A stretch of 10,850 nt of DNA from positions 1 to 10,850 of the forward strand of contig NW_021827273.1 in assembly GCF_006345805.1 (NCBI RefSeq), given 5' to 3'. A program made the position numbers and the translations under genes. Below are positions 1 through 9,864 of this stretch, piece after piece. The notes beneath the pieces are model-generated. The model ran no database searches, was not told the DNA's origin, and saw only the letters and a program-made list of their open reading frames with translations. Source of the stretch: Octopus sinensis (Eukaryota). Numbering within the stretch: the stretch's first letter is position 1; each line of letters starts with the position of its first letter.

Positions 1-1107
1 AACTTCCTCAAGTACCACTTGAAAAGGAAGTGAGAGTAGAGAGGCAAGTTTTGTCTAGCGAATGTTTTAAAAAAAGATGGGTGAATGTAGCAAGAATGGC
101 ACGTATGAATGACGAAGCCACCTTGAGCATGATCCTATGAACCAGAATTGAAACAGAGAGTTGCTTATTTGCAAAAAAAAAAAAAAAAAGAAATATAACA
201 TGTCACTACCCATTGACCGAGGTTACCGTGGTCTTTTCCGTAGGCTTTTCTTTCCACTGGTAAACCTCACCTGTCTCCCCCTTTACACTTCATATTGACA
301 TTTCTGTGATAACGATCCCTATTGATCAATTTTTTTTTTTCCTCTCCCCCTTTTTTTAACCAACCCCCCTTTTTTTGTCCTCTTTCTCTCCTTTTACGAT
401 CCCTTTTGATCGAAACTCCCCCTTCCATTTTTTATTTATTGTTTTTTTAAACCTTCAAAAAAAAGCTCTACCTTGTAATTTGTTCTATCTGTGTGCCCCC
501 TGTGTGGCTAATAAAGAAACATATCTATCTCTACCTATCTATCTATATATCTTTCTATCTATCTGTCTGTCAATCTCTCATCAACTTCTTCAAGTACTAC
601 TTGAAAAGGAAAGTGAGAGTAGAGAGGCAAGTTTTGTCTAGCGAATGTTTTAAAAAAAGATGGGTGAATGTAGCAAGAATGGCACGTATGAATGACGAAG
701 CCACCTTGAGCATGATCCTATGAACCCAGAAATTGAAAACAGAGAGTTGCTTATTCGCAAAAAAAAAAATAGAAATATAACATGTGACTCCATTGACCGA
801 GGTTACCGTGGTCTTTTCCGTAGGCTTTTCTTTCCACGGGTAAACCTCACCTGTCCTCCCCTTTACACTTCATATTGACATTTCTGTGATAACGATCCGT
901 ATTGATCAAAAAAAAAATTTTTTGTTTCCTCTCCCCCTTTTTTTTAACCCCCCTTTTTTTGTCCTCTTTCTCTCCTTTTACGATCCCTTTTGATCGAAAC
1001 TCCCCCTTCCTTTTCCTTTTTTTTTTTTTAAACCTTCAAAGAAAAGCTCTACCTACCTTGTAATTTGTTCTATCTGTGTGCAGCCCTGTGTGGCTAATAA
1101 AGAAACA

Positions 1108-1236: not shown

Positions 1237-1625
1237 CTGGAGATGAATGGATTTATGGTTAGATCGTATGTGATCTTCTTCTAGCATATGGCTGTCCACA
1301 TAGTGGTTTTTAGCCCTAAATATACACATGTATATATATATATATTAAACAATGATAGTTTTGATTGTTATTTTCATATTTGTGTATGTCTATGTCTCTA
1401 TTTGTGCGTTATCACCATCATCATCATCATCATCATCACCATCATTATCATCATTTAACATCCACTCACCATACTGGCATGTGTCGGCTGGTTTGACAGG
1501 AGATTATGAGTCGGTGAGCTGCCCCACGTTCCTGTCTGATTTGGCATGGTTTCTACAGCTCGATGTCCTTCCTAATGCTAACCACCCCAGGTGTGTAACT
1601 GGTGCTTTCAGATGCCACCGGCACG

Positions 1626-1845
1626 GGTGCCACTTGCATGACACCGACAATGGCACGACTACGATTCACGGATGGTTGCCATTTAAATGGCACCACCAAC
1701 GACGATAATTCCCAGGTGCCAATTTACATGGCACCATCGGTGACCACAACTATGATACCCAGGTGTCATTGACATGGCACCGGAAGCGAACAGCCACGGC
1801 TATGATGCACGGCTGCCACTTATAGGACACTGGCACGACCACATC
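1626..1845. repeat. Five-unit degenerate minisatellite (period 41-49 bp) in the RTE 3' UTR; each unit carries an imperfect GGTGCCA-N6/7-TGGCACC palindrome
   Basis: Palindromes at 1626-1645, 1674-1694, 1715-1735, 1762-1781 and 1811-1830. The intervening segments share an ACRRCTAYGAT-like motif (e.g. 1655-1665, 1746-1756, 1796-1806). Confidence 0.8.
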
Positions 1846-1888
1846 CTTATCGTCACTTGGCCTGACATGTCCTCTCCCGCAGAGAATA

Positions 1889-3170
1889 TCACCAGGGCTC
1901 TCGGTCACTTGTCATCTCCTCTATGATGTCCAACGGTTGGAGATCATTCTTCATCAACTCATCGAAAGTCTTCTTGGGTCTCCGTCTTCCAAAGGATCCT
2001 TCCACAGTTAGAGATCGGCACTTTTTGATACAGCTGTCCATGTCCATACACATCGCAAGACCATACCAACGCAGACGTCTCTCTTGCACACCCTATTTGA
2101 TGTCTTCAATGCTCAGCTTTTCTCTCAAGACTCCTATACTCTGTCGTACATGCACACTGACATTTTACATCCAGCGAGGCCTACTGGCTTCATTTCTTTC
2201 AAGCCTATGGAAGTCCTCAGAGAGGTCACATCCCATGTTTCACTGACATGTAACATAGTTGTTTACACACAGGCATCATAACGTCTGCCTTTCAATCTCA
2301 GGGAGACGCTCTTTGTTACCATTAGAGTTAAGATTACTCTGAACTTTGCACGTCTTATTCTTATTCTTGCAGCTACACTCAAGGAACAACCAACCACACT
2401 CCTGACTTGGCCACCTAGATGGCGGAAACTATCAACTCCCAGTAGCTTACCTACCTGGCAATTGATGGGCTCTATTTTCTCTACATTTGTGCTGTTTATT
2501 GTACCTGTGCACCTTCCACACAGAAAAACTATTATCCCCGTTAACCTTCCTCTGATATTGCTGCAACACTTATGTGTCCATACCTTACACTGGGCACATC
2601 TTATGAACTTCCTACCTACGCTTTTTCTACAGATCGAACAGTGCCATCTTCCTAAGGGGATTTGTGAATTGTCCGCTTTCCTACTTACTAAGATTGTTTT
2701 TTTTAGATGAAGTTTAAGGCTTGTTGATTCTAGTCCTTACTGATATACCTAAAATTTACCTAGTTCTGAAAGTTATTCGGCTATGATAACAAGGTCATCA
2801 GCATTGGAGATCTCCTAGAAGCGGTCATCTTAAATCCCTCTGTTATTGCCTGGAGGACTCTGATAAACAGGAAGGCGCTGAGGACTAATCCTACTTGTAC
2901 CCTAATTGATTGCTACACACGATGCTAAACCTCACCCTACTGACAGCATCCCTGTACATGACTTGTAACGCTCTCACCAACCATTCGTCCATCCCTAGCT
3001 TTTGCAGTGACCAGCAAATAAGGGATCGAGGGATCCTGTCAAAGCCTTTCTTCCGTGTTTAACAAATACCATGTACAAGGTTTTATCTTTGGCTTTGTAT
3101 TCTCCTGCATCTGCCTTATCAGAATATAGCATCAGAGGTGCTTTCGCTGTGGCATAAAACTAAATTGCAG
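1889..3170 (-). pseudogene. RTE ORF2 remnant (RT domain plus C-terminus) with stops and frameshifts
   Basis: Minus-strand peptides in order: LQFSFMPQR..STSDAIF, KGFDRIPRSLICWSLQKLGMDEWLVRALQVMYRDAVSRVR, EISNADDLVIIAE* (catalytic YADD changed to NADD, 2794-2805), KTILVSRK, GVDSFRHLGGQV..SVAARIRIRRAKFR..LKGRRYDACV*TTMLHVSETW, QERRLRWYG..CIKKCRSLTVEGSFGRRRPKKTFDELMKNDL..MTSDREPW (typical RTE C-terminus). Confidence 0.92.
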
Positions 3171-3599
3171 AAATGGAGTTAATGAAGTTGTTTATTCATC
3201 GCAAACGTTTGTTTCAATCCATCTTGCATCGGGCCCTTCAGGTAGGATATTGTATAACTGGTTGTGGTACATCCTCCGGTGCAGATGCATGTCATCGGGT
3301 GTCTTCTTTTAAAGAAGATACCTCTGTAAATATATTCGGGTTCGCTTGGAATGTTGTTGTTGCCAGAAGGCTGTTGTCTCTCATGTTGTAATCCAAGAAG
3401 CTTCTAGCAACAACATGTCAAGTGAAACTGAATATATTTAGTGAGGTATCTTTACATTAAAACAAGGCACCCGATGAGATGCATCTGCACTGGAGGATGC
3501 AACACAACATGTATAGTAGCCCACCCGCAAGCGACCGATGCAAGATGGGTCGAAACGGTCGTTGTGATGCATATTCTCGTGAACTCCGTTTCCCCAATT
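3163..3599. repeat. Long imperfect inverted repeat (foldback): arms 3163-3369 and 3401-3599, 31-nt spacer
   Basis: The reverse complement of the left arm aligns colinearly with the right arm, e.g. cacccgatgacatgcatctgcaccggaggatg vs cacccgatgagatgcatctgcactggaggatg, and gaatatatttacagaggtatctt vs gaatatatttagtgaggtatctt. Identity is roughly 75-80% by eye. Confidence 0.9.
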
Positions 3600-4039: not shown

Positions 4040-4245
4040 GATTCGGTGAATTTAGAATTGTGAACAAAGAATATAGGACACCATTGCTTGAAGCTGTTTC
4101 GGACGGTCACCTCGGAATAATGCAGCGGCTGATAGCCAGGGACGCGAATGTAAATGCCGTCGACCATGGAGGAAATAATTGCCTGCATCTGGCGTTAAAA
4201 AGAGACTTTCATTCTGAGGTGGAGCACATGACCATGTTAGATCAG
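4040..4245 (+). CDS. Internal coding exon of an ankyrin-repeat protein (possibly MIB2-like ankyrin family)
   Basis: Pyrimidine tract ending in AG at 4038-4039 (alternative AG at 4054-4055); donor CAG|GTAAG at 4245/4246, phase 0. Translation FGEFRIVNKEYRTPLLEAVSDGHLGIMQRLIARDANVNAVDHGGNNCLHLALKRDFHSEVEHMTMLDQ contains the ankyrin consensus TPLxxAxxxGHxxxxxxLxxxxAxVNAxDxxGxxxLHLA. Confidence 0.88.
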
Positions 4246-5080: not shown

Positions 5081-5335
5081 ATTCCCATATGAATAAAGCT
5101 CACTACAGATGGCTGACTACTATTCAGGCAGTTGATGGTCATCTGTGTATTGTTGTAATGTCTACTTTGGTGAGAGGAACCTACTCTGGCAGCCAGCGAC
5201 CTCCCCACCTACTGGAATAGTCCATCAGACTGAACACTTATCAATCAACTGCGTTGGTGTTCTGCCTCAACTGTGACACCGATTCTTACTTCCCTTACTT
5301 CACTTTCTTCATCAAAAGATGTTTCCTTATTAATT

Positions 5336-5936
5336 CATCATCATCATCATCATCATAATGTATCGACTGTTTTCAAAGCTGGCATGGGTTCGACGCTTTG
5401 ACAGAAGCTGGTCAGCTGAAAAGCTACCTGGGCTCCATATCTCTTTTCGCATGGTTTCGACAGTTGGACGTCCTTCCTAATGCCACCCAATTTACATAAT
5501 GTACTGCGTGCTTTTCTGCAGCACCGACACGGATATTTGTATGTGACACCAGCATGGGTGATTTTTCCGAAGCATCAGCACCCATGATCCCACAAGATTA
5601 GGATATCTCAGACGAAGAATGATACAGGGGTCATGACAGTATGCAAGGACAACGACGACTTAGCTTGGCATATCATCTCAAGTACAGCAGACTGCCAAAA
5701 GTATCGCTCCCATTTCATCCCCTCTGTGAGGCCCAACGTCTGACGGTCCTTTCTCACCACATTATTGCACGTCTTTCTGGGTCTACCCCCTCCACACATT
5801 CCCTCCACAATGAGAGATCACCCTTCTTGATGAAGCTATCTTCATCCATATGCATCACATCCATACCATGGTAGACTTCTCTCTTGCGCACAAAATCCGA
5901 TGCCTTATATACCCTGTTTTTCTCTCCAATCCACTT
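5336..5936 (-). mobile_element. Short 5'-truncated RTE LINE, copy 2 (ORF2 C-terminus, 3' UTR, (TGA)n tail)
   Basis: (TCA)n at 5336-5356; tail blocks shared with copy 1 (ctggcatg, tttgacag, gcatggtttc.acag.t.ga.gtccttcctaatgc). Minus ORF MEGMCGGGRPRKTCNNVVRKDRQTLGLTEGM..RYFWQSAV matches the RTE C-terminal GRGRPRKTW..V..D...LGL motif. Confidence 0.88.
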
Positions 5937-8945: not shown

Positions 8946-9864
8946 ATGGCGAAAAGTAAAGAACTCACAAATTCAGAGAAAAACTTAATTATTGAACTGT
9001 AGAAAGTAGGTAAAAGTTACAGGAAAATATCAGAGACACTTTGTATTCCGCTTACTACCATATCTTCATTTATTCAAAGATATAAGGAGTCGGGAACTGT
9101 TGAAAACAGAATAGGATCCGGAGCACCACGCAAGATTTCCCCAAGATCTTTAAGAAAAATGAAGCGAAGAATCGGAAAAAAACGCAATAATCACCAGAAA
9201 GGAGTTTTCATAGGAATGAACTGAAGTCACGCTCTCCTAGAAAAACTCCTCTGTTGACTAAAAGGCATAGAGATGCCCGTTTAAAATTTGTTATGAACAT
9301 AAAGATAAATCTGATACATTCTGGGAAAATGTTCTATGGACAGACGAGACGAAAATTGAATTGTTTGGACGAAATTCGCTTACCCATGTTTGGAGTAAAA
9401 ACACAATTCCTACCGTAAAGATTGGAGGTGTGGGGGTGTTTCTCTGCAAATGGTACTGGCAATTTACATGTGATAGATGGTAGAATGAATGCAGAGATGT
9501 ACCAAAATATTTTGAACAATAATTTATGCGACTCTGTTGAAAAGCTCCAGCTTTGTGAAGGGTGGGTTTTACAACAGGGTAACGGCCCTAAGCACACGGT
9601 GAAGTCTACCAATATGGATTGTCAATCACAATATAAATTATTGTAATGGCCAAGCCTGTCACCTGACTTGAACCCCATTGAAAATTTGTGGCGTTATTTG
9701 AAAACTGAAATTCAAGAGCCCCAACATGCATTACAGATTTGAAGAAAATTTGTCAAGAAGAATAGGAAAAAATTCCTAAAGAAACATGCGAGTCATTGGT
9801 GAAGAACTACAAGAAGATATTGGTTGAAGTGGAACTGAATAATGGTTATGCTACGAAGTATTAA
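8946..9864 (+). pseudogene. Tc1-family DDE transposase pseudogene
   Basis: MAKSKELTNSEKNLIIEL*KVGKSYRKISETL..GSGAPRKIS (paired-like HTH; TAG at 9000-9002), RSPRKTPLL, FWENVLWTDETKIELFG (D1 at 9343), VWGCFSANGTGNL, WVLQQGNGPKHT (D2 changed to G at 9578), *WPSLSPDLNPIENLW (E at 9680), C-terminal NGYATKY*. Several deletions and frameshifts. Confidence 0.95.

What the first reader, a model, noticed from the sequence alone, without database searches (positions are those of the whole stretch)
2509..2640. Complete C4HC3 PHD-finger motif inserted inside the reverse-transcriptase domain of an RTE LINE
Seen: an open minus-strand frame (2700 to ~2265) reads KTILVSRK..GRWH-CSIC-RKSVGRKFIR-CAQC-KVWT-H-KC-C-SNIRGRLTGIIVFL-CGRC-..-LGVDSFRHLG. 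The spacing is C-x2-C-x10-C-x2-C-x4-H-x2-C-x14-C-x2-C, with a W-x-H-x2-C core and an aromatic residue two positions before the seventh Cys. All eight ligands are intact although the catalytic YADD has decayed to NADD. Established: this is the PHD consensus; PHD fingers often read histone H3 tails; PHDs in LINEs are best known from ORF1 of CR1/L2-group elements. Here it sits between the RT subdomain-6 (KTK-like) and subdomain-7 (V.SF.YLG-like) motifs of ORF2. Inference: the family may carry a chromatin-reading module on its RT that steers insertion. I cannot confirm whether this has been described for this family.
Basis: partly seen in the sequence, partly recalled or inferred. Interest (0 to 1): 0.78.

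Follow-up and report, generated by a model that had tools for sequence, protein, structure and literature searches.

The report
PHD zinc finger inside LINE reverse transcriptase
A dead octopus-type RTE jumping-gene copy carries a genuine PHD zinc finger inside its reverse transcriptase; hundreds of intact relatives keep it under selection, so it probably docks the enzyme on chromatin, though that role is untested.

Summary
Window 2640-2509 (minus strand) encodes C-x2-C-x10-C-x2-C-x4-H-x2-C-x14-C-x2-C. It passes Pfam PHD (27.2 bits against a cut-off of 24) and is predicted to fold as a PHD finger.

It is a family feature, not a quirk of this copy. At least 610 protein clusters share the finger with its RT flanks. 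All 74 intact full-length relatives (APE + RT, about 1000-1126 aa) have it 57 residues after YADD. It is a roughly 60-aa insertion between RT motifs 6 and 7. Finger-less RTE relatives lack it, and finger-bearing elements form one clade.

Each ligand is kept in 100-106 of 108 diverged representatives. Finger dN/dS is 0.06-0.16, at or below the rest of the ORF.

The closest solved relatives are Pygopus PHD fingers, which read H3K4me. The family keeps the Trp and aromatic pocket walls and the Val and small-residue floor. It lacks the acidic residues Pygo uses.

R2's "motif 6a", whose name places it just after RT motif 6 and which touches target DNA, appears to occupy the same loop.

The window copy is 5'-truncated, frameshifted and decayed. 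Its eight intact ligands are compatible with chance (p about 0.14). Histone reading and insertion steering remain inference. I found no published description.

The parts
1455..3376 (-). 5'-truncated, decayed copy of an RTE-type LINE. It has the RT from about motif 1-3 onward, the finger, the thumb and C-terminal tail, and the 3' UTR. There is no APE domain. It has several frameshifts and stops.
   Evidence: tblastn of intact relatives: P0237 aa 601-1038 maps to window 3170-1868, and P0048 aa 499-650 maps weakly to 3376-2903. The three-frame translations show stops and frame changes. The 5' limit is approximate.
2266..2733 (-). 156-codon open stretch: end of the RT palm (motif 6), PHD finger, motif 7 and the start of the thumb.
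   Evidence: Translation. Used as the query.
2509..2640 (-). PHD finger from Cys1 to Cys8 (CSICRKSVGRKFIRCAQCKVWTHKCCSNIRGRLTGIIVFLCGRC).
   Evidence: translation; PF00628, 27.2 bits; pLDDT 89-94; the top 50 Foldseek hits are all PHD fingers, rmsd about 2 A.
2644..2646 (-). Trp at position -2 of Cys1. It aligns with the pocket-wall residue Tyr341 of human Pygo1.
   Evidence: The family has Y/W/F here in 167 of 201 distinct fingers. Pygo residue roles come from PMC2726290.
2578..2580 (-). Trp of the W-x-H core. It aligns with Pygo1 Trp366, the wall between the K4me and A1 pockets that is essential for H3K4me binding.
   Evidence: Conserved in 106 of 108 representatives. Alignment. PMC2726290.
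2794..2805 (-). RT motif 5, decayed from YADD to NADD.
2686..2703 (-). RT motif 6 (KKTILV; family consensus KTKVM).
2410..2436 (-). RT motif 7 (VDSFRHLGG; family consensus V..FCYLGD).
1889..2089 (-). RTE-type C-terminal tail (RLRWYG...GRRRPKKTF...DREPW, then a stop).
   Evidence: The same tail occurs in finger-bearing and finger-less relatives, including Necator and plant elements.
1411..1454 (-). (GAT)n microsatellite at the 3' end of the element (ATC on the + strand).
   Evidence: TRF, period 3, 14.7 copies. A second truncated copy ends in the same repeat at about 5334-5356.

Best explanation
SHOWN. Window 2640-2509 (-) encodes a true PHD-type C4HC3 zinc finger. It is the lineage-defining, roughly 60-residue insertion of a large, old and still active subclade of RTE-type LINEs. 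In every intact member the single ORF reads APE endonuclease, then RT motifs 1-6, then a short conserved linker (SG-[KR]-[YWF]-P), then the PHD, then RT motif 7, the thumb and the RTE tail. The finger is kept by purifying selection at least as strong as on the rest of the protein. The window copy is a dead, 5'-truncated pseudogene of this family, so nothing works at this locus.

INFERRED mechanism, for active family members. The finger is of the Pygopus-like kind also found in ORF1 of CR1/L2 LINEs. It keeps a semi-aromatic pocket: Trp of W-x-H, an aromatic at -2 of Cys1, and a Val and small-residue floor. It appears to sit in the loop where R2 elements have 'motif 6a', an RT loop that wedges into upstream target DNA. 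This placement rests on the motif's name; no solved R2 structure was aligned across the loop. I think it most likely binds a lysine-bearing tail, the best candidate being the histone H3 N-terminus in a K4-methylation-dependent way. That would dock or orient the RT-endonuclease on nucleosomal target DNA during target-primed reverse transcription and so bias where insertions occur.

My confidence in identity and conservation is about 0.95. The confidence figure below is for the histone-tail docking function.
For: Identity:
- Pfam PHD at 27.2 bits on the window peptide, and 18-32 bits on relatives.
- AF2 model of the window peptide: finger pLDDT 89-94.
- All top 50 Foldseek PDB hits are PHD fingers: TAF3 rmsd 1.9 A, PHF23 TMt 0.70, ING1/4/5 TMt 0.68.

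Family feature:
- 610 clusters at E<=1e-3. Most hits align in a single stretch across flank, finger and flank.
- 74 of 74 intact ORFs of 907-1126 aa have the finger at YADD+57, with YADD to FxYLG spacing of 125-132 aa. Finger-less RTE relatives have 63-70 aa.
- Finger-bearing elements are monophyletic in an NJ tree built on 886 non-finger columns.

Selection:
- Each ligand is kept in 100-106 of 108 representatives that are under 50% identical to one another. G38, V39, G40, S43, I44, W52, S58 and L64 are also conserved.
- Among four intact elements, finger dN is 0.07-0.10 and omega 0.06-0.16. The rest of the ORF has dN 0.12-0.22 and omega 0.14-0.22.
- Clusters at >=90% identity hold dozens of intact copies on 3.3-4.7 kb contigs.

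Architecture:
- Full-length model has pLDDT 90.3 and pTM 0.83, with the finger at 89-95.
- The whole-protein fold matches L1 ORF2p and R2.

Pocket:
- The finger profile's best PDB matches are Pygo1/2 PHD (E 1.3e-8), sharing YPCGxC..V..ILC..C.KW.H..C.G.
- In Pygo1, W366, Y341, V350 and A356 line the K4me2 cavity, and W366E abolishes binding (PMC2726290). The family keeps W, an aromatic, V and S at these positions.

Position:
- R2 RT motif 6a contacts or wedges into upstream target DNA (PMC11204384; PMC12180492).

Precedent:
- Pygo-like PHDs occur in CR1/L2 ORF1 and have been proposed to target chromatin (PMC4120745).
Against: - No binding data exist.
- The two acidic residues that Pygo needs have no counterpart. 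These are the D352 lip of the K4 pocket and E360 for A1/R2. The family loop is 2 residues shorter, and E360 aligns with T/S/N.
- The finger is strongly basic, at net +5.8 +/- 2.1 over about 44 residues. That sits awkwardly with a basic H3 tail and would suit nucleic acid. By the same count, though, the H3K4me3 readers PHF13 and PHF23 score +3 and +5.
- 20 of 201 fingers have Asp instead of the aromatic wall.
- I could not obtain model coordinates. It is therefore unknown whether the pocket faces solvent or packs on the RT, and whether it lies near the DNA path.
- Equivalence to R2 motif 6a rests on sequence topology (an insert between motifs 6 and 7) and on the name only.
- Foldseek E-values for the isolated finger are weak (0.009-0.2) because the domain is small.
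Confidence: 0.42

Rival explanations
1. The finger is a nucleic-acid-binding module. It would be an enlarged, zinc-stabilised version of the RT 'motif 6a' loop that grips upstream target DNA, the primer strand or the template RNA during target-primed reverse transcription. No histone would be involved.
For: - Net charge is +5.8 +/- 2.1, with conserved K/R at HKRC and IKGRL.
- The acidic residues used by Pygo for the H3 tail are absent.
- The insertion point appears to be the loop that touches target DNA in R2.
- The RTE relatives scanned here show no Pfam domain after the thumb, and only two carry a C-terminal C2H2-like motif. L1 and R2 have a C-terminal Cys-rich domain or zinc knuckle (L1 from established knowledge; R2).
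Against: - The best sequence and fold relatives are all histone-tail readers.
- The Trp and aromatic pocket walls and the Val and small-residue floor are the most conserved non-ligand positions. A generic electrostatic DNA binder would not need them.
- The basic H3K4me3 readers PHF13 and PHF23 have comparable charge.
- Finger-less RTEs manage without such a module.
Confidence: 0.27
2. The finger is a structural or protein-protein interaction module. It would stabilise the palm-thumb junction, or recruit a host or element factor (as Pygo PHD binds BCL9 on its rear face), without reading chromatin or nucleic acid directly.
For: - High pLDDT for the finger and a high pTM of 0.83 for the whole model suggest a fixed position on the RT.
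- The G-V-G-x-N-S-I loop is rigidly conserved, with a fixed 10-residue length in 198 of 201 fingers.
- Pygo PHD has a second, cofactor-binding surface (PMC2726290).
Against: - Conservation of the solvent-pocket Trp and aromatic pair is not explained by a purely structural role.
- Finger-less RTE RTs fold and work without it.
- No partner is known.
Confidence: 0.2
3. The motif is a chance arrangement of Cys/His in a decayed pseudogene, or a host exon captured by this one copy.
For: The window copy is dead. Retention of its 8 ligands is not statistically remarkable (p about 0.14).
Against: - The same finger, in register with the RT motifs, is present in 74 of 74 intact relatives and in hundreds of clusters.
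- Pfam, PDB sequence and fold searches all return PHD.
- Omega is well below 1.
Confidence: 0.01

Closest known systems
PHD fingers in ORF1 (types I-III variants) of CR1 and L2 LINEs (Kapitonov & Jurka 2003; Metcalfe & Casane 2014, PMC4120745)
   Same: Both are PHD fingers carried by a non-LTR retrotransposon, about 50 aa long. Both have Pygopus PHD (2vpb, 3zpv) as the best structural or sequence relative. Both have been proposed to target chromatin.
   Different: Those fingers sit in ORF1, or at the N-terminus of a single ORF, in the Jockey-superfamily clades. Here the finger is spliced into the catalytic RT domain between motifs 6 and 7 of an RTE-group element, which has no ORF1-type protein in the ORFs examined.
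Pygopus PHD finger (human Pygo1/2, Drosophila Pygo; PDB 2vpe, 2vpg, 4up0)
   Same: It is the best PDB sequence match (E 1.3e-8). The two share YPCGxC, V, I-L-C, C-x-K-W-x-H and C-[ST]-G. The K4me-pocket residues W366, Y341, V350 and A356 all have conserved counterparts.
   Different: The EVND lip (D352) and E360 are absent. Loop 1 is two residues shorter, and Cys3-Cys4 is C-x2-C rather than C-x3-C. Pygo's long loop 2, which binds BCL9, is replaced by a short basic G-[KR]-L loop. The context is an RT, not a Wnt co-activator.
RT 'motif 6a' of R2 retrotransposons (PDB 8gh6, 9nl2, 9nl3)
   Same: Both are lineage-specific elaborations of what appears, from the motif's name, to be the same RT loop (after motif 6, before motif 7). 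In R2 the loop contacts or wedges into upstream target DNA.
   Different: R2 motif 6a is a short loop without zinc ligands. Here the loop holds a complete, independently folding roughly 45-aa zinc finger. Spatial equivalence was not verified with coordinates.
Chromatin-reader modules fused to other integration enzymes: the chromodomain of chromovirus (Ty3/gypsy) integrases and the RAG2 PHD finger that reads H3K4me3 (from established knowledge, not tested here)
   Same: The concept is the same: a histone-mark reader physically coupled to a DNA-insertion or recombination enzyme biases or activates it on marked chromatin.
   Different: The enzyme classes differ (DDE integrase or recombinase versus RT/APE). 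Those readers are terminal appendages or separate subunits, not inserts within the catalytic domain. Function is demonstrated there and only inferred here.
Canonical RTE elements (C. elegans RTE-1, BovB; here Necator americanus RB195_012270/019713 and plant RTE-like proteins)
   Same: Single ORF with APE + RT. They share the C-terminal tail RLRW[FY]GH...GRP+..W...DR..W and have a microsatellite 3' end.
   Different: They have no finger. YADD to FxYLG spacing is 63-70 aa rather than 125-132 aa.

Membership tests
PHD finger (Pfam PF00628) | C4HC3 ligand pattern with canonical spacing | tested here: met
   C-x2-C-x10-C-x2-C-x4-H-x2-C-x14-C-x2-C in the window. The ligands are kept in 100-106 of 108 relatives.
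PHD finger (Pfam PF00628) | Profile score above Pfam's gathering threshold (24 bits) | tested here: met
   27.2 bits for the 51-aa window peptide, covering profile positions 1-47 of 47. The score is 22.2-24.9 bits in longer window contexts. Relatives score 18-32 bits.
PHD finger (Pfam PF00628) | Interleaved (cross-brace) two-zinc fold with a small beta-sheet | tested here: met
   AF2 model with pLDDT 89-94 across the finger and two short strands. The top 50 Foldseek PDB hits are all PHD fingers, with rmsd 1.9-2.4 A over 46-53 columns. This is a prediction only. Zinc binding itself is not testable in silico.
Histone H3K4me-reading PHD subclass (Pygo, TAF3, ING, BPTF type) | Aromatic or semi-aromatic lysine pocket (Trp of W-x-H plus a second aromatic wall) | tested here: met
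   Trp in 106 of 108 representatives. Y/W/F at -2 of Cys1 in 167 of 201 fingers. The floor is V (189/201) and S (187/201). These map to Pygo1 W366, Y341, V350 and A356.
Histone H3K4me-reading PHD subclass (Pygo, TAF3, ING, BPTF type) | Acidic residues that hold H3 A1/R2 and the K4 ammonium (Pygo D352 and E360) | tested here: not met
   The loop is 2 residues shorter, with no Asp lip. The E360 position is T/S/N. Net charge is +5.8.
Histone H3K4me-reading PHD subclass (Pygo, TAF3, ING, BPTF type) | Measured binding to an H3 tail peptide | not testable with these tools
   Needs peptide arrays, ITC or NMR.
RTE group of non-LTR retrotransposons | Single ORF with an N-terminal APE endonuclease and an RT, and no RNase H | tested here: met
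   Full-length relatives show Exo_endo_phos + RVT_1 (+PHD) in one ORF of about 1000-1126 aa, on contigs of 3.2-4.7 kb. The window copy itself lacks the APE part because it is 5'-truncated.
RTE group of non-LTR retrotransposons | RT phylogeny placing it with reference RTE elements | tested here: inconclusive
   The nearest finger-less relatives are nematode (Necator) and plant RTE-like proteins that share the RTE tail. No curated Repbase or Dfam references (RTE-1, BovB, RTEX, Proto2) were available, so the subclade is not named.
RTE group of non-LTR retrotransposons | Short 3' UTR ending in a simple repeat | tested here: met
   (GAT)n at 1411-1454 and at about 5334-5356, at the 3' ends of the two copies in the window.
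CR1/L2-type ORF1 PHD | PHD located in ORF1, upstream of the APE | tested here: not met
   The finger lies inside the RT, 57 residues after YADD, in all 74 intact ORFs.
RT motif-6a-type insertion (R2) | Insert between RT motifs 6 and 7 | tested here: inconclusive
   The finger lies after KTK and before FxYLG. The L1 ORF2p alignment breaks at this point. That R2 motif 6a occupies this loop is taken from its name. No R2 alignment across the loop was inspected.
RT motif-6a-type insertion (R2) | Contacts upstream target DNA during TPRT | not testable with these tools
It needs superposition on 8gh6, 9nl3 or 9hdo, or a cryo-EM structure.

The most novel reading that the evidence does not exclude
A whole, ancient and still active subclade of RTE LINEs has built a histone-tail (H3K4-methyl-state) reader into what appears to be the RT loop that touches upstream target DNA in R2. 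Recognition of a nucleosome mark would then be mechanically coupled to target-primed reverse transcription and would steer where these elements insert. That would make it the first chromatin reader embedded within a reverse-transcriptase catalytic domain.
Probability: 0.33. Interest if true: 0.8.

Novelty: new variant of a known kind. Interest (0 to 1): 0.55.

Why it matters
PHD fingers in LINEs are known only as ORF1 or N-terminal modules of CR1/L2 elements. Their role has never been shown. Here the same Pygo-like finger is spliced into the RT catalytic domain, apparently in the loop that recent R2 cryo-EM work shows touching target DNA.

If it reads histone tails, it would be a compact natural example of coupling chromatin state to target-primed reverse transcription. 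It would also give a directly testable handle on why some LINE families show insertion-site bias. The tests are pocket mutants, finger swaps with finger-less RTEs, and insertion maps compared with H3K4me maps. This is relevant too to current efforts to engineer non-LTR retrotransposon proteins for targeted gene insertion.

If it instead binds nucleic acid, it shows how the 6a loop can be elaborated into a zinc module.

For genome annotation, the finger is a simple diagnostic of a large RTE subclade. It also warns that isolated 'PHD-finger' gene models in invertebrate genomes, such as O. bimaculoides A0A0L8FQH9, can be LINE fragments.

Tried and rejected
- **Word-index search with the decayed window peptide.** It gave only one hit, an O. 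bimaculoides fragment. The exhaustive HMMER search was needed.
- **Taxonomic distribution.** Two cluster look-ups and one contig look-up returned almost only unnamed ENA, JGI and Logan metagenome or transcriptome contigs. The only named finger-bearing proteins are from Octopus bimaculoides and Acanthocheilonema viteae, so the host range stays poorly defined.
- **Literature.** Ten full-text searches found no description of a PHD inside an RTE RT. The RTEX search was wasted on unrelated acronyms. Kapitonov 2003 and 2009 (PMC7528939, PMC2829327) are not held. Repbase and Dfam are not searchable here, so prior description cannot be excluded.
- **Octopus RTE-2_OV (PMC9115989).** I considered that its reported 'C2H2 zinc finger' might be this PHD. 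The sequence was not retrievable from the supplements. Finger-less sister RTEs (P0331, P0336) carry a genuine C-terminal C2H2-like motif, so RTE-2_OV more likely belongs with them. I dropped the idea.
- **Net charge as a discriminator between histone and nucleic-acid binding.** It is not decisive, because PHF13 and PHF23 are also basic.
- **Spatial placement of the finger relative to the RT cleft.** Model coordinates are not exposed to scripts, so no distances or superpositions could be computed.
- **PF27108.1.** It appears in precomputed Pfam hits over the finger but is not in the local Pfam copy. Its identity is unknown.
- **Chance motif or single-copy exon capture.** Rejected.
Full report
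**1. The observation**

The minus strand of window 2733-2266 is an uninterrupted 156-codon frame. It reads LESTSLKLHLKKTILVSRKADNSQIPLGRWHCSICRKSVGRKFIRCAQCKVWTHKCCSNIRGRLTGIIVFLCGRCTGT...VDSFRHLGG...YDACV and then a stop. Cys1 is codon 2640-2638 and Cys8 is codon 2511-2509. The spacing is C-x2-C-x10-C-x2-C-x4-H-x2-C-x14-C-x2-C.

NADD, a decayed YADD, is at 2805-2794. KKT (RT motif 6) is at 2703-2686. VDSFRHLGG (motif 7) is at 2436-2410.

The 51-residue peptide matches Pfam PHD (PF00628) over the whole profile at 27.2 bits (cut-off 24), E 3.9e-6. Embedded in longer window peptides it scores 22-25 bits. Against PDB sequences its best matches are the PHF13 and PHF23 PHD fingers.

**2. What surrounds it**

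The window is eukaryotic. It contains microsatellites, TE fragments and an ankyrin-repeat exon. The only named close hit is an Octopus bimaculoides protein fragment, 70% identical.

tblastn with intact relatives shows that the finger belongs to a LINE copy on the minus strand, from about 3376/3170 to 1868.
- The copy is 5'-truncated and has no endonuclease.
- It is broken by frameshifts and stops.
- It ends in an RTE-type tail, RLRWYG...GRRRPKKTF...DREPW, at 2089-1889.
- A 3' UTR follows, then a (GAT)n repeat at 1454-1411.

A second 3' fragment of a related element lies at about 5925-5677 and ends in the same repeat.

**3. The finger is a family feature**

An exhaustive HMMER search of 1.84 billion representatives with the 156-aa peptide found 610 clusters at E<=1e-3. 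Most hits align in one stretch across RT flank, finger and RT flank. The consensus is CGVCxKGVGxNSIxCxxCxxWVHKRCSGIKGRLxxxxxFxCxRC.

In 108 representatives, each less than 50% identical to the others, every one of the eight ligands is kept in 100-106 sequences. G38, V39, G40, S43, I44, W52, S58, L64 and F/Y70 are also conserved.

Profile searches recovered 74 intact ORFs of 907-1126 aa, and all of them carry the finger.
- It always starts 57 residues after YADD.
- YADD to FxYLG spacing is 125-132 aa.

The next-best hits have no finger and a spacing of 63-70 aa. They include Necator americanus proteins and plant RTE-like proteins. They share the same C-terminal tail. The finger is therefore a roughly 60-residue insertion between RT motifs 6 and 7.

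In an NJ tree built on 886 columns that exclude the insert, the 74 finger-bearing sequences form a single clade. There is no bootstrap, and sampling is biased by the query.

Pfam on full-length members gives Exo_endo_phos, RVT_1 (ending near profile position 193 of 205) and PHD in one ORF. Several clusters at >=90% identity contain dozens of intact 1027-1107-aa copies on 3.3-4.7-kb contigs. This indicates recently active, probably transcribed, elements.

**4. Selection**

I fetched the coding DNA of four intact elements that are 67-77% identical in protein. Nei-Gojobori estimates are below.

| Region | dN | omega |
|---|---|---|
| Finger | 0.07-0.10 | 0.06-0.16 (where dS is not saturated) |
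| Rest of the ORF | 0.12-0.22 | 0.14-0.22 |

The finger is at least as constrained as the enzyme around it.

The window copy is different. It has lost 4 of the 22 near-invariant positions in this stretch: G38S, S43F, Y105H and D108G. It also carries P31H, N42K, R56C and W128R. The probability that four such losses all miss the eight ligands is C(14,4)/C(22,4) = 0.14. The intact ligands in this dead copy are therefore not evidence of anything local.

**5. Fold**

An AF2 model of the window peptide, using an alignment of database relatives, gives pLDDT 89-94 across residues 31-80. Foldseek against the PDB returns PHD fingers for all top 50 hits.
- TAF3: rmsd 1.9-2.0 A over 48 columns.
- PHF23: TMt 0.70.
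- ING1/4/5: TMt 0.68.
- PHF13: rmsd 2.0 A.

E-values are only 0.009-0.2 because the domain is tiny.

A full-length model of an intact relative (P0237, 1045 aa) has mean pLDDT 90.3 and pTM 0.83. The finger scores 89-95 and its two linkers 73-78. The whole model matches human L1 ORF2p (E 5e-40) and R2 proteins.

A sequence-profile alignment to L1 ORF2p runs from the endonuclease through motif 6 and stops exactly where the finger begins. L1 has only about 25 residues between motif 6 and KYLGI.

**6. What kind of PHD finger**

A finger-only profile finds Pygopus PHD fingers as its best solved relatives (2vpe, E 1.3e-8). The two share a striking string, YPCGxC..V..ILC..C.KW.H..C.G.

In human Pygo1 the H3K4me2 cavity has walls W366, Y341 and D352 and a floor of V350 and A356. 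I357 contacts T3. E360 is essential for the A1/R2 region. W366E abolishes binding (PMC2726290).

Mapping through the alignment gives the following.

| Pygo1 residue | Role in Pygo1 | Family counterpart |
|---|---|---|
| W366 | pocket wall | Trp, 106/108 |
| Y341 | pocket wall | Y/W/F, 167/201 |
| V350 | pocket floor | Val, 189/201 |
| A356 | pocket floor | Ser, 187/201 |
| I357 | contacts T3 | Ile, 172/201 |
| D352 | acidic lip | none (loop 2 residues shorter) |
| E360 | A1/R2 region | T/S/N |

The finger is strongly basic, at +5.8 +/- 2.1. By the same count the H3K4me3 readers PHF13 and PHF23 score +3 and +5.

A minority subgroup (20/201) has Asp in place of the aromatic wall. Metcalfe and Casane found the same Pygo structures (2vpb, 3zpv) as top hits for the ORF1 PHDs of CR1 and L2 elements (PMC4120745). 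The RT-embedded finger is therefore probably the same 'LINE-type' PHD relocated by domain shuffling. That is an inference.

**7. Where it sits, and the likely mechanism**

In R2 elements, 'motif 6a' contacts or wedges into upstream target DNA during target-primed reverse transcription (PMC11204384; PMC12180492). Its name places it after RT motif 6. The finger appears to occupy the same loop.

My best-supported reading for active family members has two steps.
- The finger binds a lysine-bearing tail, most plausibly the histone H3 N-terminus in a K4-methylation-sensitive way.
- That binding docks or orients the RT-endonuclease on nucleosomal target DNA and so biases insertion.

Shown: identity, position, conservation and the pocket-wall residues. 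Inferred: the ligand, the spatial relation to DNA, and any effect on targeting.

The main rival is that the basic finger is itself a nucleic-acid-binding elaboration of the 6a loop. A structural or partner-binding role is the third option.

**8. Comparison with what is known, and novelty**

PHD fingers in LINEs are documented for ORF1, or the N-terminus, of CR1 and L2 elements. Ten full-text searches found nothing on a PHD inside the RT of an RTE element.

Three caveats apply.
- Automated Pfam annotation already flags PF00628 on many of these database proteins.
- An unidentified newer Pfam family, PF27108, overlaps the finger.
- Repbase, Dfam and two key Kapitonov papers could not be consulted.

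I therefore rate it a new variant of a known kind. There is a real chance that curators have seen it without publishing on it.

The octopus RTE-2_OV element reported with a 'C2H2 zinc finger' (PMC9115989) is probably a different lineage. Finger-less sister RTEs in my set carry a C-terminal C2H2-like motif.

**9. Verdict**

The functional inference of chromatin reading that steers insertion is plausible but untested, and I put it at about 0.4. The argument from ligand survival in this copy is not valid.

Interest is moderate to good. This is a conserved, selectable reader-type module inside a reverse-transcriptase catalytic domain, apparently at a loop now known to touch target DNA in R2, and it can be tested directly with standard assays.

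Noticed in passing
window 5677-5925 (-), with UTR and (GAT)n tail to about 5334: A second, much shorter 3' fragment of a related RTE element. It has the coding tail GGRPRKTCNNVV...LTEGM and ends in the same GAT/ATC microsatellite as the main copy.
   Followed up: partly
window 4060-4215 (+): An ORF encoding an ankyrin repeat (Pfam Ank, E 7e-8). It is likely an exon of a host gene, so the TE copies may be intronic.
   Followed up: partly
window 22-445 and 605-1029: Tandem duplication with a period of about 583 bp, in three collinear blocks at 98%, 97% and 83% identity. Its nature is unknown.
   Followed up: no
window 9254-9646 (+): ORF fragments resembling a Tc1/mariner transposase (WGCFSANGTGNLHVIDGRMN...LQQGNGPKHT). 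Pfam gave no hit at E<=0.01. I recognised it from memory only.
   Followed up: partly
proteins P0331 and P0336 (C-termini), finger-less sister group of the PHD-bearing clade: They carry a C-terminal C2H2-like motif (F.C..C......SRIGL.SH.R.C). This is probably the 'C2H2 zinc finger rare in RTE' reported for octopus RTE-2_OV. It suggests two independent zinc-finger acquisitions in RTE lineages.
   Followed up: partly
precomputed Pfam column for P0171, P0175, P0183, P0230, P0238 and others: Pfam family PF27108.1 is listed over the finger region but is absent from the local Pfam copy. Its name, and whether it was built for this LINE finger, are unknown.
   Followed up: partly
family fingers such as those beginning KSKVDPCGVC (20 of 201 distinct fingers): A subgroup has Asp instead of the aromatic residue at position -2 of Cys1 while keeping the W-x-H Trp. 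This could mean a different lysine-methylation preference or a different ligand.
   Followed up: no
UniProt A0A0L8FQH9_OCTBM (P0001): This 140-aa 'uncharacterized protein' of Octopus bimaculoides starts in the middle of the finger and continues into RT motif 7 and the thumb. It is a LINE fragment annotated as a gene.
   Followed up: partly
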